Virus record (IMG/VR): IMGVR_UViG_3300037087_000760
Location: 124,001-188,000 of that record
DNA length: 64,000 nt
Reading direction: 5' to 3' (one strand)
The position numbers were made by a program, and so were the translations under genes. Shown here in pieces: positions 11,396 through 42,808 of the stretch (its first letter is position 1; each line of letters starts with the position of its first letter). Below the pieces are notes generated by a model. That model did not search any database. It saw only the letters and a program-made list of their open reading frames with translations, and was not told the DNA's origin.

Positions 11396-12616
11396 ATGGA
11401 TAAGTATAGTTTCCTTGACCAAGACCAATACAAGTTTACGATGATGCAGGCCGTCATTCGACTTTTTCCAAATTTAATAGTCAGATACAAATTCATTAAT
11501 CGTGGAAAGACAGTTTGGCCAGAGGGAATGGCTCAAAAACTCAGAGAACGATTGAAACGATTTTCCGAGGAAGCAATTCTTACAAAAGAAGAATTGGAAT
11601 ATCTTTCTGGAATCCGTTTTTTCCTTCCATTCTTCCTTTGGGTTCTTTCAAAATATCGTTTCGATGTAAGTGAAGTTCATGTTACCGATAATATTGACGA
11701 TACCTATGTTGAGGGATACTGGTGGAGAACAATCCTTTGGGAATGTATATTTTTATCAATGTTATCTGAGTTATATCACGAGATGACAGGTCATAAACTT
11801 CCCGAAAGAAGTATCCTTACCAAACTTAATATGAGTAAAGGGTGGGATTTTTATAAAAACGACATCAATTTCGTTGAAGCTGGTTTCCGCCGTAGGTTTT
11901 CTTTCGATAACCAAGATTATGTTATCAATGATTTGATTAAATCCTCAAAAAGTTGTCTTATCGGTACAAGTAATGTATATTTCGCTAAAAAATACAATCT
12001 GATACCAATCGGGACTGTCGCTCACGAATGGTACATGGCTCATTCAGCTATGTTCGGATATCATGAAGCAAACCGTAAATCATTAGAAGATTGGATCAGG
12101 GTTTACAATGGAGATTTGGGTACGGTATTACCCGACACTTTCACATCAAAGGCATTTTTCAACATTTTCGATACACACTTCGCTAAATTGTTTGATGGGT
12201 TCAGACAAGATAGTGGTGATCCCTTTATCATCGGTCATTTGGGTCTTGATAATTATTACAGGACAATTCATGATAAACATATAATTCAGTCAAAGTCAGT
12301 TATTTTTAGTAACGCCTTGGATAATCTCAAATCAATCCTTGAAATCAGTGATGAATTCAAAAAAGAACTTATTACCCGTTTCATGATTGGAACTTGGTTA
12401 ACTTGTGATATTCCTATCATTTCGGATGAATCGAAGTCTGTTGATTTTTCTACTATGGAAAAAATAAAACCATTAAACATTGTCATGAAATTATCTCATG
12501 TGTTTATTGATGGTGTATGGATTCCTGTTGTTAAATTGGGAGATGGTAGTGGGGAGAAATATACAGGTGATCCCAATCAGATTGATTTAGCAAAAAGAAT
12601 TTTAAATATTAAGTAA
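11396..12616 (+). CDS. pncB: Nicotinate phosphoribosyltransferase
   Basis: LDQDQYKFTMMQAV, EAGFRRRFS, GTSNV, GTVAHEW, PDTF, RQDSGDP, VKLGD. Confidence 0.93.
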   Translation: MDKYSFLDQDQYKFTMMQAVIRLFPNLIVRYKFINRGKTVWPEGMAQKLRERLKRFSEEAILTKEELEYLSGIRFFLPFFLWVLSKYRFDVSEVHVTDNIDDTYVEGYWWRTILWECIFLSMLSELYHEMTGHKLPERSILTKLNMSKGWDFYKNDINFVEAGFRRRFSFDNQDYVINDLIKSSKSCLIGTSNVYFAKKYNLIPIGTVAHEWYMAHSAMFGYHEANRKSLEDWIRVYNGDLGTVLPDTFTSKAFFNIFDTHFAKLFDGFRQDSGDPFIIGHLGLDNYYRTIHDKHIIQSKSVIFSNALDNLKSILEISDEFKKELITRFMIGTWLTCDIPIISDESKSVDFSTMEKIKPLNIVMKLSHVFIDGVWIPVVKLGDGSGEKYTGDPNQIDLAKRILNIK

Positions 12617-14964
12617 GATGGAAAACTATTTAAGTCCAAAAACAGAAAAAATAATAGAAGTATTCGCTATTATTTTAACTTGTGTGTTCATGTTTGGTGT
12701 GATTCTTACACCAGTAATGATATCCTATTATTATTTTCATTTTGATACCTATTATATTGGTTTTTTAGTATCAGCTATAATTACAACAGAGATCAGTGTT
12801 GGTATCAAAATTTATGGAAAGAAAATAGAAAAAAAAGGAAAAATACCATTTAGAGAATATCTAAATCAATTAAAACCAAACATCATCACTGATATTTTTG
12901 TGATTCTCTCATCTTCCATACTACTTATGATTATATGTGCAGTAATCACTTTTATTTTAGCTCTCTTTGATATCAATCATTTTACAAATGGTTTTCTAAA
13001 TGGAATCATTTTGGCACTTGTGTTGATAGGAATTAATAAATTGTATAAAAAAGAAATTAAAGGAAAATCTTTGTTGGTATGATAATTACAAAACGAACAC
13101 CATTTGGAGTTAATACAATGGACATTCCTATTACGGATAGTCAATTGGATGAAATAGTGAATTCTGATAAACACATTCAATATATTTGTCCTGAATTACC
13201 TGCTTGTGAAAGGGAATTTCTTATTTCAGGAACTACACCTAAGGAATGGGAGAAAATGTTCGGTGGTTGTAGTAATCATTGTCAACCATGTAAATATAAT
13301 GTAATTCAAATCAATGAACCATGAAAAAAATATTAGAAAGAAAAGATTTTATCAAATTTACGCATCTGAAAAGTTATATAGAATCTGAGGTGATCGGATT
13401 AAATTTGGGTGATTACCCAAATACAGAATTCGATCAAACTAAATGGGGGGATTTGATTTTTAATCTAAAACTTATGTTTCATTGGTTGAACCATATGAAT
13501 TCACATTCTTATACAGGAATGTATCATGGATCAACAGGATTCTTACATATCAATAAAATTAAAACTGTACCTAATTCAGAATTGAAAATTGTTATCAATG
13601 AGAACAACGACATTGAATTTCTTGTAGTAAAACGAAATACTTATAAATTAAACTTATATAAATCTTAAACAAATGAAAAAATCAAATGTTAAAAGGCTTG
13701 TTGTCTATTTAAACAACATTGGAAAAAACAAAGATTTTCATACAACTTACACATACAAAGATGTTGTTGATGAATCTGAAGCAATACGTGTTGTTTGGGC
13801 TATGCATTTAGGGCCAACAGATAACACAAGTGATGTGTTGTTAAAAATAAAAAAGGTCATCTTCAACAATAAACCACTTACTTCTTTTGAGAAAAAGATA
13901 TAAATGAGAACATATGGAAATACTTGGGGGGTTTTTGATAAGGATGATGTGAATGTTCAATCCCAATTAGTTCTTGCTAATTTAAGAAAAGGCGATAAAC
14001 TGAAAATTGGTTCTATTGAATATGAAGTAACTGTCCAAACCAAGAAAACCCTAAGATTAAAATCCGATAAAAAATGTTATTCATTTAAAATTTGGATGTT
14101 GGAAGAATTTGGAAAGTGGTGTTGTAATGCGGGTAAAGGGTATGATCCAGCTGATAAAATATTGAGTGATATACAGGGTGATTTAATTCTGGATAGTATA
14201 AACTCTAATAACCCACTTCATGAATTGACCGATTCTGGGAAAATTTTATTGAGAGATCCGATTTATGAATTCTCAATAGGAATGAATACTTGGAAGAAAG
14301 CGATGGACAGAATACTTTCAGTAATAAAATGGCACAGCTTAGAAAATGATTTTAAAGATATTGTTATTGATAGTAAATTTATAACAGAAGCTAAACATAT
14401 TTTTTCACTTCCCTTTGTAAAAGAAGAAATTATAAGATATACCAAAGGATTCAAAGGTGAAGCAAAAGAATCAAAAGAGGCCTTTCTTATACTTGGTAAG
14501 TATATGAAAGGAGAAGATATAACGGAAGAAGAAAAGAACTTTTTTAAAGACCAGATGATTGACATTCTTAAAGGTATCGGGGTCATTCTTCCAATTCAAT
14601 TAATACCATTACCTTTTGTGAGTACAATTCTACTTATTGTTATGGATTATACACTAAAAAGTATGGGTATAAAAATTTTACCGAGTTCATTTTATGAGGA
14701 GGAAAAGAAAGATGAAAAATTATAAAGTATCTGATTTTAATCAGGGAGATAAAGTAAAGATTATTGGAAACATTGGATTTGCTCTATCTTCTGGTGGAAC
14801 TTATCCCCCAAAAGATTCGAAAGAATATCCAATGGTCGGAATTATCGAGAAAAAATCACCATGTTTATTATCCTTGATCCCAATTGGTTATTCTATCACG
14901 GTAAATGGATATGGGTTTCGTTTGGATACTCTTATTAAGAATGATTTAATTGAAAAAATAGAAA

Positions 14965-15192
14965 ATGAATCCTGATGAATGTATCGCTTGTGGAAAATGT
15001 TGTAATAAACATTGGTTGGTAAAATTAACGAATGACAGAGAAAAAAAGATGTTTAAAGGAAGTTTGGTTTCTGGTGAATTTATATGGACGAATGAATGTA
15101 AGTTTCTTTTAAAGAATGGTAAATGTAAAATTCACGGAGAAAAACAACCTTATAAATGTAAAGAATACTTTTGTGAGGGAAGAAAAATTTAA
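14965..15192 (+). CDS. YkgJ-like Cys-cluster (Zn/Fe-S) protein
   Basis: CIACGKCC...C.FL...KCKIH..QP..CK.YFC. Confidence 0.7.
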   Translation: MNPDECIACGKCCNKHWLVKLTNDREKKMFKGSLVSGEFIWTNECKFLLKNGKCKIHGEKQPYKCKEYFCEGRKI

Positions 15193-15195
15193 GTT

Positions 15196-15711
15196 ATGAA
15201 TTATCTAAGAATAATATTAAGTTGTTTCGTAATTTATTTGTTTATTGTAGTAGCAATTAGATTATTCGGGAAAAAGGAATTGTCCCAATTATCGGTTGTT
15301 GACTTGGTATTCATTCTTCTTATAAGTAATGCGGTTCAAAACGCGATGGTAGGGTCTGATTCATCTCTTTTAGGTGGATTGATCGCCGCTAGTACCTTAT
15401 TCATAGTAAATTATTTCTTTAAAATTTTCCTATTTAAATATCCCAGATTTAATAAACTGGTTCAGGGGAAACCTATACCACTTATCATACGGGGAGTTGT
15501 AAATGATGAAAATTTATTAAAGGCCAGAATGACTTTTGCTGAATTAAGAGAAACGATCCGTGAACATGGTATAGACCCGAATAATATAAAGAAAATTGAT
15601 TTGGTGTTACTGGAGGTGGATGGTAATATAAGTGTCCTGACTAATAATTTTGAATCCAAATCAAAGAAAAGAAGATCACCACATAAAATGTTAAAAAAAG
15701 ACGCAAATTGA
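15196..15711 (+). CDS. DUF421/YetF-family membrane protein
   Basis: RLFGKKELSQLSVVDLVFILLISNAVQNAM; LEVDGNISV. Confidence 0.85.
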   Translation: MNYLRIILSCFVIYLFIVVAIRLFGKKELSQLSVVDLVFILLISNAVQNAMVGSDSSLLGGLIAASTLFIVNYFFKIFLFKYPRFNKLVQGKPIPLIIRGVVNDENLLKARMTFAELRETIREHGIDPNNIKKIDLVLLEVDGNISVLTNNFESKSKKRRSPHKMLKKDAN

Positions 15712-15888: not shown

Positions 15889-16707
15889 ATGGAAACTTAT
15901 AAACCAGCTTTACTTATTTGGATGGAAAAAATGTTTAAACATGCACGAGAAAGACAATGGTTTGAAACATACCATTGTTTTGATGTACATGGTGTTATTT
16001 CTAATCCAGATTATAGAAAAACCGAAAAGGTCGGAAAGGAATTTAAGATTAATTATTATCCTTGGGCCAAGGAAACCCTTCAATATCTTACAAAGAATCG
16101 TCCAGATATGATTCTATTTATTTATACATCATCGTATAAAAAAGAAATAGAAAGATACATGGAACAATTCAAAAAAGATGGTATCCATTTTAAATATGTA
16201 AATGAAAATCCTGAAATTTCTGATGCCAAGGGAAGTTTTGGTTGTTACGATAAGAAACCTTACTGGAATTCTATATGGGAAGATAAAGCTGGTTTCGATC
16301 CAGAGATAGATTGGAAATCATTTTATGACTATTTCACAACTTCAGATTATAAACCAGATCCGAGTTGGAGTTTTAAATCAGATGAATCTTATCATGAAAA
16401 AATAAAACCAATAAGTTATAAAGATTTGACTGATGAACAATTGATAGAATTTGCTAAACTAAGAATTGATAATTCTCCTGAGTGGAAAAGTTATGGAAGA
16501 TTATACTATGAAAAGCATGTGAATAAAAAAATTACTATCAAAAAAATCACCATCGAGGACAAGCATAATTATGATTATTTTTGTGTGTCTTTTATTGTTA
16601 AAACAAAAGAATTTGCTGACGAAAGATTACCAATTCAATTTGATAGGTTTTATCCCAATGAAATATCATATCTTATTAAGTGTGGAATTAACTTTGAAAT
16701 GTTATGA
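15889..16707 (+). CDS. HAD-like phage protein
   Basis: CFDVHGVI, IYTSS, NENP. Confidence 0.5.
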   Translation: METYKPALLIWMEKMFKHARERQWFETYHCFDVHGVISNPDYRKTEKVGKEFKINYYPWAKETLQYLTKNRPDMILFIYTSSYKKEIERYMEQFKKDGIHFKYVNENPEISDAKGSFGCYDKKPYWNSIWEDKAGFDPEIDWKSFYDYFTTSDYKPDPSWSFKSDESYHEKIKPISYKDLTDEQLIEFAKLRIDNSPEWKSYGRLYYEKHVNKKITIKKITIEDKHNYDYFCVSFIVKTKEFADERLPIQFDRFYPNEISYLIKCGINFEML

Positions 16708-17994: not shown

Positions 17995-19065
17995 ATGAAA
18001 ATACTAATTGGAATAACAGGTGGTATAGCGGCTTATAAGACATTGGATGTCATATCCATTCTTCAAAAGAAAGGACACGAAGTTCATGTTATTATGAGTG
18101 AAAACGCAAAACATTTCGTTACAGAAGAAGTGGTAAATGTTATCAGTAAAGAAAATCTGAAAACAGAAACATTCGGAGAAACAATTCATATCAAGGAATC
18201 AAAATGGTGTGATGCTTTTGTTCTTTGTCCAGCAACAGCCAATTCCATCGCTAAAATAAATTATGGGATATCAGATAGTTTTCTGTTGTCTACTGTTTTG
18301 GCACTTCCTGATAAAATTCGAATTTGTTGTCCGGCCATGAATACCAATATGTGGGAGAATCCCATCACCCAGCAAAATATTGATTCATTAAAGAAACATG
18401 GTTGGAAAATAATTTTTCCAGTTGAAGGTATGTTGGCTTGTAATGATTTCGGTATGGGTAAATTACCATCACCGAAAGTAATTGTTGAGAAAATCACTGA
18501 TATTATCAATCCACTTCCAATGTGGTGTTCACCATTCAAAAATAATTTGAATTATAAAGGAACGACCATAGATTCATTTTCTTTCCTTGATTATGAATGG
18601 AGAAAAGAATTCGAAATCAATATGTTTCCTCATGTGGGGTCTTTTGGAGTACGCCGTAGACACGATGTTCATAAGGGTATAGATTTATATGCCGAAGTTG
18701 GAACTGAGGTCTATTCAGTAGAATTTGGTGAAATAGTAGACATTTGTTGGTTTACTGGTGAACCTCTGGGGATGCCTTGGTGGGAAGATACTAAGGCTGT
18801 TTATGTAAAGGGAAAATCTGGAATTGTGGTATATGGTGAAATCGAACCAAATCCCTCCTTAGAGATTGGTCAAACTTGGTGTTCTGAAATGTTGATCGGT
18901 ACAGTGAAAAGAGTTCTCAAAAAGGATAATCACAGACCATTATCCATGTTACATTTGGAATTACATCATCCAGATCACATTCACACTCCACAGTGGGAAA
19001 TCGGTCAACCGAAACCAGTTGGCGTTCTTGATCCGACCCCTTATTTGTTAAATATTTACAAATAA
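17995..19065 (+). CDS. coaC: Phosphopantothenoylcysteine decarboxylase (CoaC) fused to an M23 peptidase-like domain
   Basis: GITGGIAAYK, PATANSIAK, PAMNTNMW, LACNDFGMG; C-terminal HKGIDLYA (HxxxD) and MLHLELH. Confidence 0.85.
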   Translation: MKILIGITGGIAAYKTLDVISILQKKGHEVHVIMSENAKHFVTEEVVNVISKENLKTETFGETIHIKESKWCDAFVLCPATANSIAKINYGISDSFLLSTVLALPDKIRICCPAMNTNMWENPITQQNIDSLKKHGWKIIFPVEGMLACNDFGMGKLPSPKVIVEKITDIINPLPMWCSPFKNNLNYKGTTIDSFSFLDYEWRKEFEINMFPHVGSFGVRRRHDVHKGIDLYAEVGTEVYSVEFGEIVDICWFTGEPLGMPWWEDTKAVYVKGKSGIVVYGEIEPNPSLEIGQTWCSEMLIGTVKRVLKKDNHRPLSMLHLELHHPDHIHTPQWEIGQPKPVGVLDPTPYLLNIYK

Positions 19066-19072
19066 AAATATC

Positions 19073-19786
19073 ATGAAAAAGATTTTAATTACTTCAGGTG
19101 GTACAAGAGAATATATTGATGAAGTTCGTGTACTCACCAATATATCATCTGGTAAATTGGGTTCATTAATAGCGGATCAATTTTCGATATTTAATGGTCC
19201 TTATTCCGTTTCTCATAAGTGTAATTTATATGAAGTACATTTCGTTTATGTGAAAGGTTCATTGAAACCATTTTTTGAGGGGGATGATGTTATATTACAT
19301 GAAGTAACTGATGTTAAATCCGTTTATGATATAATGGAAAAACTCGTTCCAGAAATGGATGTGGTTATTCATCCGATGGCCGTATCAGACTTTGGATTTA
19401 CCCCAATCAAAACAAAACTAAAAAGTAATGATCCAGAGGGTTTCATTCAAAGTATGAAAGAAAGAATTTATCAAACTCCAAAGATATTATCTCATATAAA
19501 AGAATGGAATCCCAATTGCTTTCTTATTTCTTTTAAATTTGAAAATGAATTAACAAGAGATGAATTACTTTTCTCCGCTGAAGAATCGATGAAGAAGAAT
19601 GGTTCTGATATTGTCATTGCTAATGATAAATCAGAAATGAAAAAATTGGGTGTTCACAAGGCTTATGTTATCAGGAAAGAACCAGTACCAACTTATGGTG
19701 TTTATGGAAGATTGGATTGTGAATTAAATGGAAAAGATGAAATAGCCAGAAAAATTTTTAAAATAGTAAACGAATTGAATGATTGA
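19073..19786 (+). CDS. coaB: Phosphopantothenate--cysteine ligase
   Basis: ITSGGTREYIDEVRVLTNISSGKLG, AVSDF, ISFKFE, IAND. Confidence 0.9.
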   Translation: MKKILITSGGTREYIDEVRVLTNISSGKLGSLIADQFSIFNGPYSVSHKCNLYEVHFVYVKGSLKPFFEGDDVILHEVTDVKSVYDIMEKLVPEMDVVIHPMAVSDFGFTPIKTKLKSNDPEGFIQSMKERIYQTPKILSHIKEWNPNCFLISFKFENELTRDELLFSAEESMKKNGSDIVIANDKSEMKKLGVHKAYVIRKEPVPTYGVYGRLDCELNGKDEIARKIFKIVNELND

Positions 19787-20318
19787 TTTTATAAAAATAT
19801 TAGATCCTGAAACAGAATTAGAAAGAAAAATTTTAATTGACCCTATTTTCATAAAAGGTGTTCAGTACGGTAGATCAAGACCCGGCCATCCCGAAGGACA
19901 AATCATATTTCATATTAGAGATATTTTTAGAAATATTGATAATTGTAAATATGTTAACCCCGAAGAAAGAAGAAAACTCAGACTGATTGCTCTTTTTCAT
20001 GACACTTGTAAATTTCAAGTGAATTACGATTTACCAAGAGTAGGTGATAATCATCATGGTTATTTGGCTCGCAAATTCGCTGAAAAATATATCACTGATG
20101 AAGATATACTCCAGATAATAGACCATCATGATGACGCTTATAACATATGGAAAAGATCCAGTAAGAGAAATGAATGGGATAAAGGTGAAAAAGATTTACT
20201 TAAACTCGTTGATAAAATAAATGATATAAATTTATACTCTTGGTTTTATTTCTGTGATAATAGTACTGGAAACAAAAGTCAAGGTGATTATGAATGGTTT
20301 TTAAATATAACAGCATGA
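19779..20318 (+). CDS. HD-domain phosphohydrolase
   Basis: FHIRD, LFHDTCK, HHGY, HHD. Confidence 0.7.
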   Translation: MIDFIKILDPETELERKILIDPIFIKGVQYGRSRPGHPEGQIIFHIRDIFRNIDNCKYVNPEERRKLRLIALFHDTCKFQVNYDLPRVGDNHHGYLARKFAEKYITDEDILQIIDHHDDAYNIWKRSSKRNEWDKGEKDLLKLVDKINDINLYSWFYFCDNSTGNKSQGDYEWFLNITA

Positions 20319-22078: not shown

Positions 22079-23851
22079 ATGAATAAGAACATTAAGATAT
22101 CCCTCAACCAGATTAATACCGTAACTGGTGATATCAAAGGAAATTACAGTAAAATATTGGATCTTACCCATAAGGCTATTTCTGATGGAGCGGACATCAT
22201 TGTATTTCCCGAAACATCGGTAACAGGATATTGTGTTGGTTCTCTGTGGGATAATGTAGATTTTATTTTTGAACAGGAAAATTGTATCAAAGATTTGATT
22301 AAAATTATTCCTCATGATAAAGCCCTTATCATTGGTTATATCAGTTATCATGGAGCTAAACCTGATGGTTTCCCATTACTTCGTAATAGTGTCGCTGTTA
22401 TCAATCAAAATAAATTACAGAGGTACGACAAACAACTTCTCGCCAACGCTGATCATCACGAGGATAGAAAATATTTTAAGCCGGGAAAGAAATCCAAAGT
22501 ATTTGAACTTCATTTAAAAGATGGTGAAACCTTAAAGGTAGGTGTTCCTATTTGTGAAGATGCTTGGTATATGAATCATTTCCGTAATATTCCAAAAGAA
22601 ATGATTAATTTGGGGGCCGAAATTTTGATTATTCCCAATCAATCTTATTTCTATTATGGTAAGGATTTACTCCGTGAAAAACTTTTCAGTACCATCGCTA
22701 ATGAGTATCATATTCCAGTTATCACCCTCAATTCTGTTGGAATTGGTGATATTGTAAAGAACATCATCATATATGATGGAAGTTCAATGGTATTCAACGA
22801 AAACGGTGAAAAACTAAGACATTTCAAGAAATTCGGGGAACAATCTGATATTATTGATTTATTTACCAGTAAATCTTCTTTATATCATAATGAATACTTC
22901 GAAAATTATACCACAAAACCAAAATTTGAAGAAATCATTGACGCTATCTGTTTTGAACAGAAAGAAATGTTTCGTCTGTTGGGTATAAAGAAGGCTCAGG
23001 TTCATCTTTCTGGTGGAATTGATAGTATCATAGTCGCGGTTCTTTGTATCCTCTCTATGGGGAAAGAAAACTGTGTTTTTATAACAAATCCGACTTCACT
23101 TAACACTAAAAGTCTGAAACTTGTTCATAAGATGGTTAAAACTCTTGGAGTTGACTTATACACCGATGAATTAGATGAAATTGTTAACGCTCTCAAAAAG
23201 GCTGATACCAAAGCATTCGGAGAAACCACATCCAAAATTCAGGGTGAAATTGAAACAGTGTTTCACGCCGTTGGTAGGACAGTTCAGGGATTAGCGGCCA
23301 CTCATCGTTTCGGTAGTGGTATAGTCGCCACAGGTAATCATACAGAAATCGTTCTTGGTTGGTGTAACTTTCATGACATTGGTTCAATTGGAGTACATTC
23401 AATCATTGGTGATTTAACCAAATTGGAACTCTATCAATTATCTCAGGTATTGAATGATAAATGTCGTGAGATGTACAATGGTGAGAATGTTATTCCTGAG
23501 GAATTGTTTAATGGAAAAGTTCTCCCCGCAGCTGATTTACCAGATAGTAAACTTGACCCATTTGATTATTACATTCAGTCTGGATTATGTGCCGCTTACA
23601 TTCGTGAAAGAAAATCCAGAAATCAGTTGATCGAAGATTTTAAAAATCACAGATTGAATCCTGATTTCTTTCCCTCAAATGTATATGAGAAATATACTAT
23701 GGAACAGTTTATCAAGGAAGTTGAAATCACAATGTCAAGAAGTAGAACTTCCGTATTCAAGGCCGCACAGCATGCACCTATTGTGATATTAAGTCCTCGT
23801 AGTAGGGGGTTCTCAAATCGTGAAACCATTTTGAACAAATATATATCATGA
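22079..23851 (+). CDS. nadE: Glutamine-dependent NAD+ synthetase
   Basis: Nitrilase domain (FPETSVTGY, YDK, ICEDAW) plus synthetase domain (LSGGIDS, TGNHTE, GDLTK). Confidence 0.92.
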   Translation: MNKNIKISLNQINTVTGDIKGNYSKILDLTHKAISDGADIIVFPETSVTGYCVGSLWDNVDFIFEQENCIKDLIKIIPHDKALIIGYISYHGAKPDGFPLLRNSVAVINQNKLQRYDKQLLANADHHEDRKYFKPGKKSKVFELHLKDGETLKVGVPICEDAWYMNHFRNIPKEMINLGAEILIIPNQSYFYYGKDLLREKLFSTIANEYHIPVITLNSVGIGDIVKNIIIYDGSSMVFNENGEKLRHFKKFGEQSDIIDLFTSKSSLYHNEYFENYTTKPKFEEIIDAICFEQKEMFRLLGIKKAQVHLSGGIDSIIVAVLCILSMGKENCVFITNPTSLNTKSLKLVHKMVKTLGVDLYTDELDEIVNALKKADTKAFGETTSKIQGEIETVFHAVGRTVQGLAATHRFGSGIVATGNHTEIVLGWCNFHDIGSIGVHSIIGDLTKLELYQLSQVLNDKCREMYNGENVIPEELFNGKVLPAADLPDSKLDPFDYYIQSGLCAAYIRERKSRNQLIEDFKNHRLNPDFFPSNVYEKYTMEQFIKEVEITMSRSRTSVFKAAQHAPIVILSPRSRGFSNRETILNKYIS

Positions 23852-24120: not shown

Positions 24121-24843
24121 ATGAACTTAGAATTTACAGAAATCGACAATGTGATAATTGTACCCGAATGTACAGCATCAATGAATGTAGATCCACAAAA
24201 AGGATTTACTCCATTATGTCCTGAAGAACTTCCTGTTCCAGAAGGTGACAAAATTGTCAATGAATTGAATGGTCAAAACTCTATCACTAAATATAAACTT
24301 GTGTCTAAGGATGTTCATCCTAAAAACGCAGCTTGGATCGCTACACCAGAGAATCCCCAATTATCAGTTGTCGGACTTCCTGATGTTGATGTTCGTTGGA
24401 ACAGACATTGTGAATCTGGTACTCGTGGAATGGAACTTCTTGATGGATTACCAAAAATGACAGAATACGACTTTTTTGTTGGTAAGGGTTTCGAACCGAA
24501 TCTTCATCCATATTCAGCTTGTTATCATGATGTGGCAAAAACAATATCTACTGGTGTCATTGAATGGTTGAATCAACATAATATTTTAACGGTTATTGTT
24601 GGTGGATTGGCACTTAATGTAGAAGAAACCCCTCTTTGCGTTGGTCATACAGTAATTGATCTCGCTGAGGCTGGTTTTCAGGTCGTTCTTAATTTAGGAG
24701 CTGTTCGTGGACTTGGAACAATTGAAGGTCAGGAAAAATTTATTGAAATGTTGAAAAATAAATATAATGTATTTGTTGTTAATTCTTATAAAGATATTAG
24801 CACCAATCTTACATTTGATTTACCATATACTGGAACAGTTTAA
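24121..24843 (+). CDS. pncA: Nicotinamidase
   Basis: VDPQKGF, ELPVPEGD, KDVH, WNRHC, GKG, YSAC, GGLA...CV. Confidence 0.88.
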   Translation: MNLEFTEIDNVIIVPECTASMNVDPQKGFTPLCPEELPVPEGDKIVNELNGQNSITKYKLVSKDVHPKNAAWIATPENPQLSVVGLPDVDVRWNRHCESGTRGMELLDGLPKMTEYDFFVGKGFEPNLHPYSACYHDVAKTISTGVIEWLNQHNILTVIVGGLALNVEETPLCVGHTVIDLAEAGFQVVLNLGAVRGLGTIEGQEKFIEMLKNKYNVFVVNSYKDISTNLTFDLPYTGTV

Positions 24844-26858: not shown

Positions 26859-27844
26859 TTTTTTTATTCAATAATATTTCTTATATTTGAGGAAATAAGA
26901 AAATTATGAAGATAAGAATTCAAGTGATTGAAAATAGTAATGAGTCACTATCAATATCCTATACTTTACAGAAACTAACCTTAGTTGGTTGGGTTAATTT
27001 ACAATTATCTGATGTCTGGAAAGAAAAACTTCCCTATTTAGATGGAATTTCACCCATCCGATTCTTCGGAAAGGCCGGGAGTAGTTGTACTGATTCAGAA
27101 AAAGCTAAAACAGTCAAGACTTTTTTGAATAAATCCAAATATCTTGATGATTCTATGTACGAACTAATTTTTGGTTATAAACCTATACATAAGAAAGTTA
27201 GTTATCTCTATTAAGATGAAAAAAGAACCAATTCTTATTACAGAAGATGGTGTACCATACTATGATGAAAATAAGTTGGTCTGGGATACACATGATTTTT
27301 CCTCTGGTGATCCTGCTATAATAGTTAATCCTACATTTTTAGATCAAACACCTGTAAAATATGCTAAAAATATTGATCGAATGTTTTTTCATAGTAAGAA
27401 AAAAGCATTGGAATATATGAAAGATAACATAAGATTTTTAGCTTTGACTGACATTGATAAACTATCAAATGGTATTAATGAAGGAAATATAATTATCAAT
27501 AGAAAAGATTTAATAAAATTACTCAGAAAAAGAATAAACGATGAAAACTGTTAGTATACCAGCTAATGTTCATTTACCCAAGGTCGAAGTCGAAATCGAT
27601 CCACTTGATGTCTTAAAAGAATTAGAGGAAGAATTTTTAGATAAATATGGATGGATTGAAAAAAAAGGAAAGAAATATTTTTTAATGTATCCAGAACTCA
27701 GCTTTGATGAAAAGAGTTATCAAGTACGTCAAGTATCTACGAATGAAGTGAAATTTATTGATGCTATTCATACGATGCAAACTTTTTTACAAGAAAAAAA
27801 TAAGAAATCAAAATCAAAACCAAAATCTTAACAAAAAACTCACA

Positions 27845-29890
27845 ATGAAAAAACTCGCAATTATTTTTATGTCATTACTATTTGTAGTAATGGTTGGTTA
27901 TTCTCAGAAATTCAATCCTGATTCGGGATACAGATTAACAAAGGATACCTTACAATTAAATGAGGTTACTATCAGTTCCTTTCTTCCATACCAAGCAACA
28001 ACCTTGATGCCAATCACTTTTAAGAATTTATATAAAGCTGATTTGGGATTGAAAAATTATGGTCAAGAACCAAGTAGGATTTTAAATACCACTCCATCTA
28101 TAACCACTTATTCGGAATCAGGTGGTGATTGGGGTTATTCTTATATAAGATTAAGAGGTATTGATCAAACCAGAATAAACACCACTCTTAATGGTGTTCC
28201 AATGAATGAACCAGAGGATCAAGGATGTTATTTCTCAAATTATCCTGATTTTCTTCAGTCTGTTGATATGTTACAAATACAGAGAGGAACAGGAATGACT
28301 AAAAATGGGTCAGCCAGTTATGTTGGAAGTATGAATTTCGAATCATATAAACCATCTACATCAAGTGTAGGGGCCTTTTTCGGAGCTGGATCATTCGGAT
28401 CAACCAAAATTTCAATGAATACTGAACAAAATTGGAAAAAAGGTGGGTTATATGCTTCATTTTCTGACCTTGAAACAAAAGGTTATAAATATCATTCTGG
28501 TAATCATTCCAGAAGTGCTTTTCTTGTGGGAAATTATACAACTGGAAGAAATCAATTTAAATTTGTTGGTTTTGCTGGTGAACAAATGAACCAATTAGCT
28601 TGGTTGGGTGTTCCAATAGATAGTATCAATTTAGACCGTAGATATAACACTTGTACCACTCGTGAAAATGATCATTTTAATCAATATCATTTGCAATTTC
28701 ATCACACCTATATTATAGATAATAAATCCAGATTTAATTATTGTGTCTATTATAATTATTTGAATGGTTTCTATACTTATGATGGAATTCATAATGGAAC
28801 ATGGGATACTATATCATCTGGTAAATATAATTTATATGCATATCATCTTTATTCTAACTTCTTAGGTACTAATGTAAACTATTATATTAAACTTGGACCA
28901 TTGGATTTTTATACAGGGGTTAATGGTTCTAAGTATGATAGGGAACATCATGGAACAACAAATGATATCTATACTTACAAAAATACAGGATTCAGAGATG
29001 ATTTAAGTGGATTTGTTAAAGGTATTTTAAACGCTGGAAGTTTCAATTTTTATGGTGATGTTCAATATCGTTATACTACTTTTGTTTATAATGGTGATGT
29101 TTATCTACAACATTTTATTTGGAATTTTCTGAATTATAGTGTTGGTGTTGAATATAAAGCCAAACACAACATCCTTTATTATTCCATTGGTAAAACACAT
29201 CGAGAACCTATTCGTAATGATATGTTTGGTGGTTATGATAATCTATCGTCTGATCCTCTTGGAAAAGCTGTTTTTTATGATTTAAAACCAGAATCAGTAT
29301 TGGATCAGGAATTTGGCTATCGTTATATCATAGGAAATTTAAATTTGAACATCAATCTATATTATATGTTATTCAAAGATGAATTAGTATTAACGGGAGC
29401 TTACGGGCCAACAGGATTACCACTTCATGAAAATGTAGATAACAGTTTCAGGTCAGGATTTGAATTCGATTTTAAATACAGATGGAAATTTGGATTAACA
29501 TTACTTCAAAATGTATCCTATAATTATAGTAAAATAACATGGACAAATAAACAAACAACTCCTGTCTTAACACCAGAATGGCTATCAAATACTGAAGTAA
29601 ATTATAATTACAAATGGTTTATAATCGGTTTGAGTGGTAGGTATCAAAGTTGGTCTTATATTGATCAAAGAAACAACTTCACCATTCCAAGTTTTTATAC
29701 ACTGAATGCTATGATTGGATTAAAATGGTCATGGGGAGAATGGGATATTTATTTGAATAACATAACTGATCAAAAAACTTTATCGAGTGGTATGGTTTCT
29801 GGTGATGGGACTCCTTATAATCAATTTATTCCTCTGTATTATGTGAATGCACCATTTAATTTCTTTACTGGACTTAAATTTAAAATGTAA
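27845..29890 (+). CDS. TonB-dependent outer-membrane receptor (vitamin-uptake type)
   Basis: Signal peptide ending SQ; plug IRLRGIDQTRINTTLNGVPMNEPE, LQIQRG; aromatic beta-barrel ending GLKFKM. Confidence 0.9.
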   Translation: MKKLAIIFMSLLFVVMVGYSQKFNPDSGYRLTKDTLQLNEVTISSFLPYQATTLMPITFKNLYKADLGLKNYGQEPSRILNTTPSITTYSESGGDWGYSYIRLRGIDQTRINTTLNGVPMNEPEDQGCYFSNYPDFLQSVDMLQIQRGTGMTKNGSASYVGSMNFESYKPSTSSVGAFFGAGSFGSTKISMNTEQNWKKGGLYASFSDLETKGYKYHSGNHSRSAFLVGNYTTGRNQFKFVGFAGEQMNQLAWLGVPIDSINLDRRYNTCTTRENDHFNQYHLQFHHTYIIDNKSRFNYCVYYNYLNGFYTYDGIHNGTWDTISSGKYNLYAYHLYSNFLGTNVNYYIKLGPLDFYTGVNGSKYDREHHGTTNDIYTYKNTGFRDDLSGFVKGILNAGSFNFYGDVQYRYTTFVYNGDVYLQHFIWNFLNYSVGVEYKAKHNILYYSIGKTHREPIRNDMFGGYDNLSSDPLGKAVFYDLKPESVLDQEFGYRYIIGNLNLNINLYYMLFKDELVLTGAYGPTGLPLHENVDNSFRSGFEFDFKYRWKFGLTLLQNVSYNYSKITWTNKQTTPVLTPEWLSNTEVNYNYKWFIIGLSGRYQSWSYIDQRNNFTIPSFYTLNAMIGLKWSWGEWDIYLNNITDQKTLSSGMVSGDGTPYNQFIPLYYVNAPFNFFTGLKFKM

Positions 29891-30604: not shown

Positions 30605-30669
30605 TTTTAAATATTTTTATCAAATAATTTTTTTTATTCAGAAATTTGACATAATTTTGTAGTCCCTTG

Positions 30670-31072: not shown

Positions 31073-31074
31073 AC

Positions 31075-31136: not shown

Positions 31137-31309
31137 CAATATAAAGGGTGCAAAACTTGTTTTAACAATGTTTTTCGGGACGGTTTAGTTAAATCGGTTA
31201 TTCTTAACCAGCCCTTCTTAGAAAATTAGAAGAATCTGATACCCGATGGTGTATAGGATACCCGAAGTACAAGGGATGATCGGTGGCAACACAATCAACT
31301 TCTTTTAAC

Positions 31310-31441
31310 GAGTGTATTAGTGTAACGAAAGCACAGGCTGTTTGATGTTAGAGTAAGTTTTAGACGGCGGTCTTGGTCATTAGATTGACAAAACTGAAAT
31401 ATCGTAGGTCGGATGAGGGTTCAAATCCCTCATACATTCCA
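31310..31441 (+). ncRNA. ~130-nt tRNA-like element with expanded anticodon and variable regions
   Basis: GAGTGTAT/ATACATTC acceptor, D stem GTG/CAC, T arm GAGGG-TTCAAAT-CCCTC, GCTGTTT/AGACGGC stem closing an oversized loop. Confidence 0.55.
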
Positions 31442-31713
31442 AAAGGTGATGTGATGGAATAGTTTTTTCCATCCTGTTTTAAGGAGAGAACATTTGAGGA
31501 TAAAGCGAGCCTACATCACAAACAGGATCACCAAATAAGGTGAGGGAAACAAAGTAGAGTACCTTTTCTTCGGATTGAGGCCTTCGGGCCGAGGGAAATG
31601 ACCTGTTCTCCCTCAACTTTTTTAAAAAACGAAATTAAATTAAACTTTTTGAAAAAAAAGTTCTAAAATAGAAAAAAGAGACTTTATAAGTTAAATATAT
31701 AATAAAAAAACAT

Positions 31714-31784
31714 ATCCAGTAGGAACGTAAGTTCCGTTTTGGGACGCTCAGCGACCCAGAGGGGAAAACTCCCCGCAACTGGAT
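31714..31784 (+). promoter_or_regulatory. Four-way-junction RNA at the 5' end of the rplL-tRNA transcript
   Basis: ATCCAGT/ACTGGAT enclosing GGAAC-GTAA-GTTCC, TGGG..CCCA and GGGG..CCCC hairpins. Confidence 0.5.
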
Positions 31785-31888
31785 AAACTTTTTGAAATGA
31801 TTATGACACAGAACATCCAAAATATGATTATTAATCAGATACCCGGTAAAAATACCGATTGGATGAACTTTGTCTATAACGAATATAG

Positions 31889-31921
31889 AAAAAACCCAAT
31901 CGGAAACGATTGGGTTTTTTT
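31889..31921 (+). terminator. Intrinsic terminator of the attenuator
   Basis: ACCCAATCG-GAAA-CGATTGGGT followed by a T-run. Confidence 0.9.
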
Positions 31922-31952
31922 GTTTTATATGTCCACCATAGTTTTTAACTGG

Positions 31953-31965
31953 TGTTCTTTGAAAT
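31953..31965 (+). promoter_or_regulatory. boxA-like antitermination site
   Basis: TGTTCTTTGAAAT; copies at 32414-32426 (+) and 45905-45917 (-). Confidence 0.6.
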
Positions 31966-32044
31966 AATGATAAATCATATTCGGATTATAAGTTCAAAAC
32001 TGATAATCTGAACATAAAATGTAAATAAAAATAAATTAGAAACT

Positions 32045-32422
32045 ATGGAAGATTTAAAAAAATTAGCGGATGATCTGAGTAATCTCACCGTATTAGAGTG
32101 TTACCAGTTAGCTAAGATAATGAAAGAAGAATACGGAATAGAATCAAATACAAAAATTGTTGGTGTGAATGTATCACCAGTTCCAACTAAGGTAGTTGAA
32201 ATTGAAAAAACAAGTTTTGATGTGATTCTAAAATCAGCAGGAACAACCAACAAACTTGGTGTTATCAAATCCATCAAAGAAATGACAGGACAAAGTTTAT
32301 TGGAAATTAAGAATCTCGTTGATAATGCACCAGCGAAACTAAAAGAAAATGTAAGTAAAGATGAAGCTATGTCTTTACTGAATATTCTGAAAGAATTAGG
32401 TGCAGAAATTGAAGTTCTTTGA
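32045..32422 (+). CDS. rplL: Ribosomal protein bL12 (L7/L12)
   Basis: LSNLTVLE, EKTSFDVILK, KLGVIKSIKEMTG, LVDNAP, LKELGAEIEV. Confidence 0.93.
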   Translation: MEDLKKLADDLSNLTVLECYQLAKIMKEEYGIESNTKIVGVNVSPVPTKVVEIEKTSFDVILKSAGTTNKLGVIKSIKEMTGQSLLEIKNLVDNAPAKLKENVSKDEAMSLLNILKELGAEIEVL

Positions 32423-35830: not shown

Positions 35831-35859
35831 TGTATATATTATTTTTTATGGGCACAAAA

Positions 35860-37236: not shown

Positions 37237-38103
37237 TTAGATTCCTAATAAATGTTTTGCTAGTGAAACCTCTGGGATATGTTGAAAATAGTACATTACT
37301 CCGAATAAAGATAGAGCCAATGAAAAGAAGAAAAACAAAGCCCATCCAATTTGTTTGTGGGTCATACTTTGATAATTATGTAATTTTTTCCATTCGAACC
37401 AAATTTCGATAACTCCCAGAATCATAAGTAAAGCAAATAATCCTATTTTTAACCAGAAAAACAGAACAGTTGAAGCTAATAGTCCAAATGATAAAATTCC
37501 CAATCCCAACCAAGATTTTAATGAGAAACCAATTGATTTAAATATTCTTCCACCATCCAATGGACTTATTGGTAAAAGGTTGAATAAATTTACAAAGGCC
37601 ATCCATCCGGCTATCGCCGCGAATAATGGATTCAGAGTAATAAAATATACTATTCCAGTAATAATAGTTAGGGCAAATCCCCAAACTGGTCCCATTATAG
37701 CAACAACGAATTCCGTATTTCTTGATTTGAAATCATTCTCAATAACAGCGGCACCACCAATGAATGGTATAAAATAAATGCCCTTAACTTTTAATCCATG
37801 TCTTTTGGCAGCCCATATATGACCAGATTCATGAACAAATAAACAAACCATGATAGCTATGGCGAATGTCCAAGTAGTGAGAAATGCATAACTCACAACA
37901 CTTCCAACGGCCAAACCTATTTTTACCACCTTTGCCCCTTTTAATAATTTTGTTACAACTGGAATGGCTTTAGATCCAATTTTTCCAAGAGCCACAAAAA
38001 ATCCTACAAAGATATTTTTCTTCTTCGGTTTTTCTTCAATCTTTGGTTGATAATTATAAGATGCTTTTACAAAAATTTTTTCTGGTTTTTCTCCAATCAT
38101 CAT
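37237..38103 (-). CDS. Site-2 (M50) intramembrane metalloprotease
   Basis: HESGH, FIPFIGG, MGP, NLLPISPLDGGR. Confidence 0.92.
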   Translation of the reverse strand: MMIGEKPEKIFVKASYNYQPKIEEKPKKKNIFVGFFVALGKIGSKAIPVVTKLLKGAKVVKIGLAVGSVVSYAFLTTWTFAIAIMVCLFVHESGHIWAAKRHGLKVKGIYFIPFIGGAAVIENDFKSRNTEFVVAIMGPVWGFALTIITGIVYFITLNPLFAAIAGWMAFVNLFNLLPISPLDGGRIFKSIGFSLKSWLGLGILSFGLLASTVLFFWLKIGLFALLMILGVIEIWFEWKKLHNYQSMTHKQIGWALFFFFSLALSLFGVMYYFQHIPEVSLAKHLLGI

Positions 38104-38714
38104 AATGTAACTTTTTTGAGGTTATAAATTTTTATCCAGTTTATAAATCCATAAATTGCCGTTCCTGTAAAAATCAATGATTCTATAGCGACAAGGTATA
38201 TTCCACTAAATCCAAACAAAAAAACACAAACTATATCACTTATTATCCAGACTAACCAAGATTCAATGTATTTAAAGGATAGTAGGTTGACACCAAGGAT
38301 ACTGAGAACTGTTACTGTGATGTCTAAGAATAGGTTTGCTGACTGTTTTTCTACTGGAAGTATCTGTCGAACTATGAAATCAATAACAAAAATGGAAATT
38401 ATAGTAATTATACTCCAAATTAGACGCTGTTTATTCGTCAACCATCTTAATCCCTTACCTTCGTTTTTATCTGTTTTTCTCCAATAAAATATGGCAACAA
38501 TACAGATGTAAGTAAAGTAAATTTGTAGAATGGCATTAGCGTAAAGTGAATTATTCCAGAAAAGAAAGAAGAAACACACTTGACCGATAATACTACAAAT
38601 CCAATTCCACCAATTAGCTTTTGTGGCAAATATAACGGAAACAAAATTGAAAATCGATCCGATCAATTCCAAGTAAGTTAAATGATAACCATATATTGTT
38701 AAGGCTGTTTCCAT
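38100..38714 (-). CDS. pnuC: Nicotinamide riboside transporter PnuC
   Basis: Multi-pass membrane protein; LYANAILQ, KYIESWLVWIISD, YGFINW. Confidence 0.88.
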   Translation of the reverse strand: METALTIYGYHLTYLELIGSIFNFVSVIFATKANWWNWICSIIGQVCFFFLFWNNSLYANAILQIYFTYICIVAIFYWRKTDKNEGKGLRWLTNKQRLIWSIITIISIFVIDFIVRQILPVEKQSANLFLDITVTVLSILGVNLLSFKYIESWLVWIISDIVCVFLFGFSGIYLVAIESLIFTGTAIYGFINWIKIYNLKKVTL

Positions 38715-41414: not shown

Positions 41415-41810
41415 ATGAAAATAAGTGATTTTTTAAAAGGACAAGGTGTTTTCAGTAATGAAATTAAAGCCAGATTCCAAAACGGACAAATCAAAATAAA
41501 TGGGGAGTCCGTTAAGGAAGATATTGATTTGAATGTGAAAAAACAAATTCCAGATCCAAAAGTTGATGATATTCCATTTGAAGCTGGAGATTGGATTTTT
41601 CACAATTTAATAACTTCGTTATCAGAGGATAAAAAGAAAAAACTATTTCTCATTACTACCTTATTTGATATTGAAACTCTGTTCTCAGGTGGATGTCAGA
41701 TTAACGACAAACCAGTTGAAGATATTTTACCAGAATTGAATATTATGAAAGGTCATATATTTTTAAAAACTTCCAAAAAACAATGTTTCATCCTAAAACT
41801 TAACAAATAA
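41415..41810 (+). CDS. S4-like RNA-binding protein resembling the TyrRS C-terminal domain
   Basis: SNEIKARFQNGQIKINGE and terminal LKTSKKQCFIL. Confidence 0.45.
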   Translation: MKISDFLKGQGVFSNEIKARFQNGQIKINGESVKEDIDLNVKKQIPDPKVDDIPFEAGDWIFHNLITSLSEDKKKKLFLITTLFDIETLFSGGCQINDKPVEDILPELNIMKGHIFLKTSKKQCFILKLNK

Positions 41811-41818
41811 AAACTAAT

Positions 41819-42808
41819 ATGACTAACAAAAAAGATAAAAAAATAGGACTTGTATTTGGAAAGTTCATGCCCCTTCATAATGGACACATGGCCTTGATTC
41901 GATTTGCACAATCTCAGTGTGATAAACTATATGTATTGTTATGTGAGGCTAATGATGAACCAATATGTGGAAAAATTCGATTAGGATGGTTATTGGACAC
42001 ATTCAAAGATGATTTGAACATAGAAGTGAGAATTACTGATGTTCAATTACCATTAGTTCCCTATTCATCTAAATTAATAGCTAAAATGTGGGCCAAATTT
42101 TTCAAGGAAGAATTTCCTGATGTGAATATTCTATTTACTTCGGAAAGATATGGTGATTTCACAGCAGAATTCATGGGTATAAAACATATACTTTTTGATA
42201 ATGACAGAGAAGAAGTTTTTGTATCAGCCACCAAGATTCGTAATCATCCACTCATTTATTGGGATTATATTCCCGACATTGTAAAACCGTACTTTGTTAA
42301 GAAAATTTGTATTTGTGGAACAGAATCAACGGGAAAAAGTATATTAACCGAAAAACTTGCTAAGAGATTTCATACTAACTTTGTTCCAGAATGGGGTAGA
42401 ACTTTATGTCCGTCTACAACTGAATGTACCATAGATATAATTAAACAAATCGGTAAATCCCACGCTACTGACATTCACAATAAAATACAATTCTCACATA
42501 AATTTTTATTTTCAGATACCGACCTGAATACAACAAAAATGTATTCCTATTTCTTATTCAATGAAATACCGAAATTTGATGATTGGATTGAACAAGAAAA
42601 TAAGTTCGATTTGTACATTTTTCTTGAAAACGATGCCCCTTTTATTCAGGATGGAACACGACTGACAAAAGAAAGAAGGGATGAACTACGAGATTACCAT
42701 TACGACTACCTTATATCTCAAGGATGTAAAGTTGAAATTGTAACTGGTAGTGATTGGGAAATCAGGTATGAAAAAGCTGTCAGAATAATTGAGGAAAATT
42801 TCGGATAA
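41819..42808 (+). CDS. nadR: NadR-type NMN adenylyltransferase / ribosylnicotinamide kinase
   Basis: GKFMPLHNGH, FTSERYG, VSATKIR, GTESTGKS, EWGR, DTD, QDGTR. Confidence 0.92.
   Translation: MTNKKDKKIGLVFGKFMPLHNGHMALIRFAQSQCDKLYVLLCEANDEPICGKIRLGWLLDTFKDDLNIEVRITDVQLPLVPYSSKLIAKMWAKFFKEEFPDVNILFTSERYGDFTAEFMGIKHILFDNDREEVFVSATKIRNHPLIYWDYIPDIVKPYFVKKICICGTESTGKSILTEKLAKRFHTNFVPEWGRTLCPSTTECTIDIIKQIGKSHATDIHNKIQFSHKFLFSDTDLNTTKMYSYFLFNEIPKFDDWIEQENKFDLYIFLENDAPFIQDGTRLTKERRDELRDYHYDYLISQGCKVEIVTGSDWEIRYEKAVRIIEENFG

What the first reader, a model, noticed from the sequence alone, without database searches (positions are those of the whole stretch)
11396..42808. Dispersed but near-complete NAD+ uptake and salvage network
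pncA, pncB, Gln-dependent nadE, pnuC, nadR and a vitamin-type TonB receptor all occur in this window. Established: phage NARP1 (ADPR-PP route) and NARP2 (NAMPT plus NMNAT) rebuild NAD+ depleted by Thoeris/SIR2-type defences. This set differs, combining the deamidating Preiss-Handler route with nicotinamide riboside import. Caveat: no NadD is visible, so NadR or a host enzyme would have to adenylate NaMN.
Basis: partly seen in the sequence, partly recalled or inferred. Interest (0 to 1): 0.7.

Follow-up and report, generated by a model that had tools for sequence, protein, structure and literature searches.

The report
Megaphage NAD+ import and salvage set
A giant phage from peat carries six intact genes for importing and recycling the building blocks of NAD+, including an outer-membrane transporter not previously tied to this job. 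The general idea of phage NAD+ salvage is already published, so this is a new variant, not a new kind.

Summary
All six genes are real and intact: pncB, glutamine-dependent nadE, pncA, a TonB-dependent receptor (TBDR), pnuC and an HTH-less nadR. The window belongs to a phage with a large terminase and more than 21 tRNAs. The same NadR protein, in the same gene order, lies on a 597-kb peat contig.

The set is not a chance scatter. In the 735-kb phage LR756501 and another relative, the same six functions form one compact island of about 8.5 kb.

The TBDR is not BtuB-like. In 72 of 80 Bacteroidota loci its orthologue sits just upstream of nadR, and 57 of those read TBDR-pnuC-nadR. Phage copies form their own clades. 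It is therefore probably the outer-membrane step of nicotinamide riboside uptake.

No NadD lies in the 211 kb that could be searched, which is about a third of the genome. Two relatives encode a MazG-NadD fusion.

PnuC+NadR is the experimentally shown NARP3 pathway (2026), and Preiss-Handler and riboside-salvage sets in jumbo phages were catalogued in 2024. What I did not find in the literature searched is the TBDR link and the six-gene island. The record also encodes five ADP-ribosyltransferase-like ORFs, so the purpose may be feeding the phage's own NAD+ use as much as counter-defence.

The parts
11396..12616 (+). pncB, nicotinate phosphoribosyltransferase (nicotinate to NaMN)
   Evidence: NAPRTase_N and NAPRTase domains. 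TIGR01514 scores 306.6 bits, above its cut-off. It matches PDB 2im5 at E 2e-58, and the His of GTVAHEW aligns with GTHPHEW. It is 50% identical to the copy in LR756501.
15889..16707 (+). HAD-like ORF, a possible accessory member of unknown role
   Evidence: It is 69-70% identical to the ORF directly downstream of pncB in LR756501 and in L007. It matches PHROG 1238. Its Atlas neighbours are viral HAD-like proteins. Pfam and NCBIfam gave no hit.
22079..23851 (+). nadE, glutamine-dependent NAD+ synthetase (NaAD to NAD+)
   Evidence: CN_hydrolase and NAD_synthase domains. It matches PDB 5kha at E 8e-39, with FPE, K, ICED and SGGIDS aligned. It matches PHROG 36784. It is 50% identical over its full length to the copy in L009.
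24121..24843 (+). pncA, nicotinamidase (nicotinamide to nicotinate)
   Evidence: Isochorismatase domain. All best PDB hits are nicotinamidases (2wt9 at E 1e-12), and the Asp, Lys, Cys and D-H-H metal ligands are aligned. It is 81% identical to the copy in L006.
27842..29890 (+). TonB-dependent outer-membrane transporter, probably for nicotinamide riboside or NMN
   Evidence: Plug and barrel domains. The model's barrel has pLDDT of about 80. Its orthologues head TBDR-pnuC-nadR operons in Bacteroidota. Phage copies form their own clades. In the alignment, 79 columns are invariant across phage and bacterial members.
38100..38714 (-). pnuC, inner-membrane nicotinamide riboside transporter
   Evidence: PF04973 scores 144 bits. 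TIGR01528 scores 95 bits against a cut-off of 42. It matches PHROG 1880 and PDB 4qtn. In relatives it lies directly after the TBDR.
41819..42808 (+). nadR, bifunctional riboside kinase and NMN adenylyltransferase, without the HTH
   Evidence: PRK08099 profile positions 60-405 are matched, so the regulator domain is absent. It matches PDB 8x7f, 1lw7 and 9x6f (the NARP3 enzyme Bas30_86, E 8e-35), with the motifs kept. It matches PHROG 3462.
50158..51120 (-). ART-PolyVal ADP-ribosyltransferase-like ORF, a likely NAD+ consumer
   Evidence: PF18760 scores 41 bits, above its cut-off. It is one of five such ORFs in the record.
62487..64000 (+). Second ART-PolyVal ORF, which runs past the end of the window
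   Evidence: PF18760 scores 39 bits.

Best explanation
This is a stretch of a megaphage of at least 597 kb from peat, most likely infecting Bacteroidota. It carries a two-branch kit for keeping NAD+ up in the infected cell.

Branch 1 is import. The TonB-dependent transporter takes nicotinamide riboside (or NMN) across the outer membrane, and PnuC takes riboside across the inner membrane. NadR then phosphorylates and adenylates it to NAD+. This is the NARP3 logic with an added outer-membrane step, copied from a Bacteroidota TBDR-pnuC-nadR operon.

Branch 2 is recycling. PncA deamidates the nicotinamide released whenever NAD+ is cleaved, and PncB makes NaMN. A NadD, either from the host or from the unseen part of the phage genome, makes NaAD. 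NadE then amidates NaAD to NAD+.

The gene identities, intact motifs, phage origin and gene linkage are shown. The substrates, the timing and the benefit (escape from NAD+-depleting defence, supply for the phage's own ADP-ribosyltransferases, or both) are inferred.
For: - Family and motif checks support all six genes.
- The record is a phage: large terminase PHROG 5989 at E 4e-40, 21 tRNAs, and the best phage hits are in the 735-kb phage LR756501.
- The same NadR protein, in the same gene order, lies on contigs of 597,284 bp and 229,679 bp.
- The same six functions are contiguous in LR756501 and L007. In L009 the order is nadE-pncA-pnuC-TBDR-NadD-macro-nadR.
- Of 80 bacterial loci with a TBDR orthologue, 72 have nadR and 60 have pnuC. 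In 57 the order is TBDR-pnuC-nadR on one strand, with a median gap of 36 bp to pnuC.
- Of 28 IMG/VR loci, 26 have nadR within 10 kb.
- Phage TBDRs fall into two clades apart from the bacterial ones, with 2 label changes on the tree against 25.5 for shuffled labels.
- NadE is the glutamine type here and in L009 but the ammonia type in LR756501. The step is kept although the gene was replaced.
- NARP3 shows experimentally that phage PnuC+NadR restores NAD+ against Sir2-HerA.
Against: - No expression or activity data exist. No RNA run was listed as holding the stretch, and three metatranscriptomes from the same study gave only short ClpP-like pieces from other organisms.
- No NadD lies in the 211 kb searched, so branch 2 is incomplete as seen.
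- The TBDR substrate rests on gene neighbourhood alone. The plug part of the model is poorly predicted.
- In this genome the genes are spread over 31 kb on both strands, so they are not co-transcribed as one unit.
- The host is inferred, not shown.
Confidence: 0.7

Rival explanations
1. The kit mainly supplies the phage's own NAD+-consuming enzymes. Several ADP-ribosyltransferases modify host or phage targets and release nicotinamide, which PncA and PncB recycle. Defence escape would then be secondary or absent. This overlaps with the best explanation and differs only in the selective reason.
For: The 211-kb record holds five ART-PolyVal ORFs, two of them in the window. PMC11662467 reports that NAD-jumbo phages also carry many NAD+-consuming genes.
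Against: The targets and activity of the ARTs are unknown. No NAD+-dependent ligase, NADAR or macro domain lies in the record. For PnuC+NadR, the only experimentally shown role in phages is counter-defence.
Confidence: 0.3
2. The TonB receptor is not part of NAD+ metabolism in the phage. It would import another nutrient, or alter the cell surface, for example to block superinfection.
For: There is no sequence match to any characterised transporter. The fold hits are generic, with PqqU, YncD, FhuA and FecA at 12-14% identity. A 2026 preprint lists phage outer-membrane proteins, including a TonB receptor, as envelope remodelling genes.
Against: The linkage to nadR and pnuC is tight and ancient in both bacteria and phages.
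Confidence: 0.1
3. The genes are bacterial, from a host flank of a mis-called provirus or a mis-binned bacterial contig, and say nothing about phage biology.
For: IMG/VR labels the record 'provirus'. The stretch also carries cell-like genes: L7/L12, ClpP, an EF-G-like gene and CoA synthesis genes.
Against: GC is uniform at about 30% over the whole record. A terminase is present. tRNA arrays and many ORFs without any family are present. The same gene order lies on a 597-kb contig. The closest homologues are in the huge phage LR756501. The phage TBDRs form clades apart from the bacterial ones. The 'provirus' label probably reflects trimming of the 229.7-kb contig (inference).
Confidence: 0.03

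Closest known systems
NARP3 (phage PnuC + NadR, Bas30_87/Bas30_86; Sci Adv 2026, PMC13464706)
   Same: Both have a PnuC-family transporter and an HTH-less bifunctional NadR. The window's NadR matches the Bas30_86 structure 9x6f at E 8e-35. The route is the same: riboside to NMN to NAD+.
   Different: - This system adds an outer-membrane TonB-dependent transporter, which that paper does not mention.
- The host is probably Bacteroidota, whereas NARP3 was reported largely in phages of Enterobacteriaceae.
- In this genome the two genes are 3.1 kb apart on opposite strands.
- The set is joined to pncA, pncB and nadE.
NAD-jumbo phages (Microbiome 2024, PMC11662467)
   Same: Both are jumbo phages carrying riboside-salvage and Preiss-Handler genes (pncA, pncB, nadD, nadE, nadR, pnuC) together with NAD+ consumers. 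The paper also proposes a counter-defence role.
   Different: - That survey does not mention a TonB receptor.
- It states that the 735-kb phage lacks a complete riboside pathway. I find pncB, nadE, TBDR, pnuC, nadR and pncA side by side in that genome.
- This phage comes from peat, not from a gut.
NARP1 and NARP2 (Osterman et al. 2024, bioRxiv 10.1101/2024.02.11.579819)
   Same: The proposed purpose is the same: rebuilding NAD+ after it is cleaved to ADP-ribose and nicotinamide.
   Different: - The record has no PRPS-like Adps and no Namat. Its only NAPRTase-family gene is a PncB equivalog.
- The record has no NAMPT.
- Nicotinamide is handled by deamidation, and ADP-ribose is not reused.
Bacteroidota TBDR-pnuC-nadR operon (for example Kaistella L005; Paraflavitalea L004 with NrtR, NAMPT and NADAR)
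   Same: The three-gene module is the same. The TBDR is about 42% identical and NadR 38% identical.
   Different: The bacterial loci almost never have pncA, pncB or nadE beside the module (1, 0 and 0 of 80). The phage lineage joined these genes to it. I found no paper describing this bacterial operon.

Membership tests
NARP3 | PnuC-family riboside transporter | tested here: met
   TIGR01528 scores 95 bits against a cut-off of 42, and PF04973 scores 144 bits. It also matches PHROG 1880 and PDB 4qtn.
NARP3 | NadR-like enzyme with NMNAT and riboside kinase domains | tested here: met
   It matches 9x6f (Bas30_86) at E 8e-35 and 8x7f at E 4e-42. The HxGH and Walker A motifs are kept, and the HTH is absent.
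NARP3 | The two genes form an adjacent operon | tested here: not met
   In the window, pnuC (38100-38714, minus strand) and nadR (41819-42808, plus strand) are 3.1 kb apart on opposite strands. They are adjacent in LR756501 and in L006-L008.
NARP3 | Riboside-dependent NAD+ restoration and rescue from Sir2-type defence | not testable with these tools
   This needs infection assays.
NARP1 | PRPS-like Adps plus Namat | tested here: not met
   The 211 kb holds no Pribosyltran_N hit. Its single NAPRTase-family gene is a PncB equivalog. The rest of the genome was not seen.
NARP2 | NAMPT plus NMNAT | tested here: not met
   There is no NAMPT: PF04095 finds only pncB. An NMNAT domain is present within NadR.
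Preiss-Handler pathway with nicotinamidase | PncA, PncB and NadE present and intact | tested here: met
Preiss-Handler pathway with nicotinamidase | NadD (NaMN adenylyltransferase) | tested here: inconclusive
   The 211 kb holds none. The 597-kb contig could not be searched, and a metagenome scan returned no contig from that sample. The relatives LR756501 and G004 have a MazG-NadD fusion scoring above the TIGR00482 cut-off.
NAD-jumbo phage (PMC11662467) | A phage genome over 200 kb with at least one complete NAD+ synthesis route | tested here: met
   The record is 211 kb and a contig with the same NadR and gene order is 597 kb. NadR alone completes the route from riboside to NAD+, and PnuC supplies the riboside.
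TonB-dependent transporter | Signal peptide, plug and 22-strand barrel | tested here: met
   PF07715 and PF00593 both match. The barrel is modelled with about 22 strands and resembles solved TBDTs at probability 1.0. The signal peptide and a TonB-box-like stretch are read from the sequence and from conserved alignment columns.
BtuB-type vitamin receptor | Sequence or profile match to a characterised vitamin transporter | tested here: not met
   There was no NCBIfam hit and no PDB sequence hit. The nearest folds are PqqU and YncD at 13-14% identity.

The most novel reading that the evidence does not exclude
This TBDR family is the hitherto undescribed outer-membrane importer of nicotinamide riboside or NMN in Bacteroidota. 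Two megaphage lineages have carried it for a long time together with PnuC and NadR. A phage would then install a complete import line across both membranes and couple it to nicotinamide recycling, as one ancestral six-gene island.
Probability: 0.5. Interest if true: 0.6.

Novelty: new variant of a known kind. Interest (0 to 1): 0.45.

Why it matters
Several bacterial defences work by depleting NAD+, and three phage pathways for rebuilding it are known. This case extends the newest one (NARP3) in two ways.

First, it shows how a phage of a double-membraned host with selective outer-membrane uptake might solve precursor access. It would bring the host's own TonB-dependent gate along with it.

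Second, it shows the import route fused with a deamidating route that reuses nicotinamide, the product released by NAD+-cleaving enzymes.

It also gives a testable substrate prediction for a TBDR family found here in at least 335 stretches of species genomes, nearly all of the 80 examined being Bacteroidota. Finally, it corrects the published gene inventory of the 735-kb phage.

Tried and rejected
- **NadD in the rest of the genome.** A metagenome scan with a MazG-NadD alignment returned 80 loci, none from that sample. A protein search with the LR756501 NadD listed no hit on a 597-kb contig among the best 120 of 374. The question stays open.
- **Transcription.** No RNA run was listed as holding the stretch. 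Three metatranscriptomes from the same study gave only 33-52-base pieces on the conserved ClpP gene, at 90-95% likeness, so they come from other organisms.
- **Single-protein scan of viral contigs for the TBDR.** It found nothing. An alignment was needed.
- **TBDR substrate from structure.** The plug was poorly modelled, and the fold hits are generic.
- **The small membrane ORF after pncB (12618-13082) as a conserved transporter.** It shows no similarity to the ORF after pncB in LR756501.
- **The M50 peptidase overlapping pnuC as a member of the system.** It is not conserved near the TBDR in relatives.
- **Other NAD+-linked genes in the record.** The only Nudix is a generic MutT-like protein. 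No macro domain, NADAR, NAD+-dependent ligase or Prs was found.
- **Host-flank artefact.** Rejected; see the rival explanations.


Full report
**What the sequence is**

The window is bases 124,001-188,000 of a 210,983-bp IMG/VR virus record. GC is uniform at about 30%. ORFs are small and tightly packed, and many match no family.

ARAGORN finds 21 tRNA genes in two arrays, and Rfam adds two weaker tRNA hits. The record encodes a large terminase subunit (PF03237; PHROG 5989 at E 3.9e-40). It also encodes an EF-G-like protein and an SbcC-like nuclease.

The exact NadR protein of the window, with the same neighbouring genes, lies on a JGI contig of 597,284 bp and an ENA contig of 229,679 bp. The phage genome is therefore at least 597 kb, and the record is about a third of it. 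The 'provirus' label most likely reflects trimming of the 229.7-kb contig. That is my inference.

DNA of the stretch is present in at least 15 peat metagenome runs dated 2018-2025. The closest phage in GenBank is the 735-kb uncultured phage LR756501.

| Gene | Coordinates | Main evidence |
|---|---|---|
| pncB | 11396-12616 (+) | TIGR01514 306.6 bits, above its cut-off. Best solved relative is a Porphyromonas NAPRTase. The His of GTVAHEW aligns with GTHPHEW. |
| nadE | 22079-23851 (+) | Nitrilase-type glutaminase domain with its Glu, Lys and Cys, plus a synthetase domain with the SGGIDS loop. It scores below the equivalog cut-off. |
| pncA | 24121-24843 (+) | Weak on profile scores, but its best solved relatives are all nicotinamidases. 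The catalytic Asp, Lys and Cys and the Asp-His-His metal site are aligned. |
| TonB receptor | 27842-29890 (+) | Plug and barrel domains. A Bacteroidota-style signal peptide ends before an invariant Gln. The ORF list begins it at a TTG at 27758. |
| pnuC | 38100-38714 (-) | TIGR01528 95 bits, cut-off 42. |
| nadR | 41819-42808 (+) | Covers profile positions 60-405 of enterobacterial NadR, so the DNA-binding domain is absent. The HxGH, ISxT-like and Walker A motifs are kept. |

**The set is a unit, not a coincidence**

In LR756501 the same functions lie on one strand within about 8.5 kb. The order is pncB, two small ORFs, nadE, TBDR, two small ORFs, pnuC, nadR, one small ORF, pncA. IMG/VR locus L007 has the same order.

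Locus L009 reads nadE, pncA, pnuC, TBDR, MazG-NadD, a macro domain, nadR. The closest relative, L006, has a TBDR 76% identical to the window's. There TBDR, pnuC and nadR lie within 5.5 kb, with pncA 5 kb upstream.

In the window the genes are spread over 31.4 kb. CoA genes, a ClpP gene, a tRNA array and an inverted block carrying pnuC lie between them. The dispersal is therefore a local rearrangement.

The NadE step is filled by the glutamine-dependent type here and in L009. In LR756501 it is filled by the ammonia-dependent type. Retention of the step despite a change of gene argues for selection on the pathway.

**The TonB receptor**

It matches no characterised transporter by sequence. A model built from 27 homologues gives a confident barrel and a poor plug. 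Foldseek places it among small TonB-dependent transporters, with PqqU and YncD first at 13-14% identity. 'Vitamin-type' in the BtuB sense is therefore not supported.

Its gene neighbourhood is informative.
- Orthologues about 42% identical occur widely in Bacteroidota.
- In Kaistella the order is TBDR-pnuC-nadR.
- In Paraflavitalea the gene sits among NrtR, Nudix, NAMPT, NADAR, a NadR-like gene and KptA.
- Across 80 species genomes, 72 have nadR and 60 have pnuC within 6 kb.
- 57 show TBDR-pnuC-nadR on one strand, with a median gap of 36 bp to pnuC, and 14 more show TBDR followed by nadR.
- Three of the eight loci without nadR are cut by a contig end.

Across 28 IMG/VR loci, 26 have nadR within 10 kb, 13 have pnuC, 9 pncB, 6 pncA and 2 nadE.

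On a FastTree of 109 sequences, the viral-database copies form two clades with support 99 and 89. The window and LR756501 are in the first. Only 2 label changes are needed, against 25.5 for shuffled labels. This is a quick tree with midpoint rooting, so it shows clustering, not the direction of transfer.

I found no paper describing this bacterial operon or linking a TonB receptor to riboside uptake. A preprint of October 2026 reports a transcribed TonB receptor in Lak phages. The words PnuC and NadR do not occur in it.

**How it most likely works**

The import branch has three steps.
1. The TBDR, energised by the host's TonB system, brings riboside or NMN into the periplasm.
2. PnuC carries riboside inward.
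3. NadR converts it to NMN and then to NAD+.

The recycling branch has four steps.
1. PncA converts nicotinamide to nicotinate.
2. PncB makes NaMN.
3. A NadD makes NaAD.
4. NadE makes NAD+.

Nicotinamide is the product of NAD+ cleavage both by defence NADases and by ADP-ribosyltransferases. The record holds five ART-PolyVal ORFs, two of them in the window. The kit may therefore serve defence escape, the phage's own NAD+ use, or both. Gene identity and linkage are shown. Substrates and benefit are inferred.

**The NadD gap**

The only cytidylyltransferase-fold gene in the 211 kb is nadR. LR756501 and the IMG/VR record behind L009 each encode a NadD with an N-terminal MazG-like part. Both score above the TIGR00482 cut-off. 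At least 374 protein clusters match this fusion protein. I could not search the unseen two thirds of this genome. Host NadD is nearly universal, which I state from general knowledge, so the branch would work in either case.

**Comparison with what is known**

- PnuC+NadR is NARP3. It was shown in 2026 to import riboside, rebuild NAD+ and defeat Sir2-HerA, and it was reported largely in phages of Enterobacteriaceae. The window's NadR matches its crystal structure.
- A 2024 survey named 'NAD-jumbo phages' that carry riboside, nicotinamide or Preiss-Handler routes together with NAD+ consumers. It proposed counter-defence.
- Neither paper mentions a TonB receptor.
- The 2024 survey states that the 735-kb phage lacks a complete riboside pathway. 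My comparison finds it there.
- NARP1 and NARP2 membership is not met in the record.

**Verdict**

What remains undescribed in the literature I could search is the TonB-dependent outer-membrane step, the ancestral six-gene island in a megaphage lineage of probable Bacteroidota hosts, and its association with a MazG-NadD fusion in relatives. I rate it a new variant of a known kind, of moderate interest.

Noticed in passing
window 17995-20318: Separate coaC (with a weak C-terminal M23-like part) and coaB genes, followed by an HD-domain ORF, lie between pncB and nadE. LR756501 encodes a coaD (L131:1492-1941). The lineage therefore also carries CoA synthesis steps, which suggests a broader cofactor theme.
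   Followed up: partly
window 15889-16707: A HAD-like ORF is 69-70% identical to the ORF directly after pncB in LR756501 and L007. That is better conserved than pncB itself. Its Atlas neighbours are viral HAD-like proteins, and there are weak structural rows for Tad3/WDGH (TM 0.36-0.37).
   Followed up: partly
window 43101-45990: A truncated LeuRS-like gene (419 aa, catalytic core only) and a GIY-YIG gene lie beside an array of seven tRNA-Leu genes and one tRNA-Tyr gene.
   Followed up: no
window 30500-32040: An ORF-poor stretch of about 1.5 kb has higher GC (0.37-0.40). It contains a 129-nt tRNA-like Rfam hit at 31311-31439, possibly an intron-bearing tRNA, and nothing else was identified in it.
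   Followed up: partly
window 32045-32422 and 26187-26858: A ribosomal protein L7/L12 gene and a genuine ClpP (not a prohead protease) both score above their NCBIfam cut-offs.
   Followed up: partly
window 50158-51120, 62487-64000; G000:C1:91870-92571, 189300-189776, 189869-190390: The record holds five ART-PolyVal ADP-ribosyltransferase-like ORFs. Four score above the Pfam cut-off.
   Followed up: partly
window 37237-38103: An M50-family membrane metalloprotease overlaps the end of pnuC by 4 nt, so the two are probably co-transcribed. It is not found near the TBDR in relatives.
   Followed up: partly
L130 (LR756501 410260-451423), L132, L134: The 735-kb phage holds a compact pncB-nadE-TBDR-pnuC-nadR-pncA island, contrary to a published statement that it lacks a complete riboside pathway. 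Its NadD is fused to a MazG-like domain, and at least 374 metagenomic protein clusters match this fusion protein. In L009 a DarG-like macro domain lies between NadD and NadR.
   Followed up: partly
window 47548-48033 and 15196-15711: A CYTH-domain ORF and a YetF/DUF421 membrane ORF. Their role is unknown.
   Followed up: no
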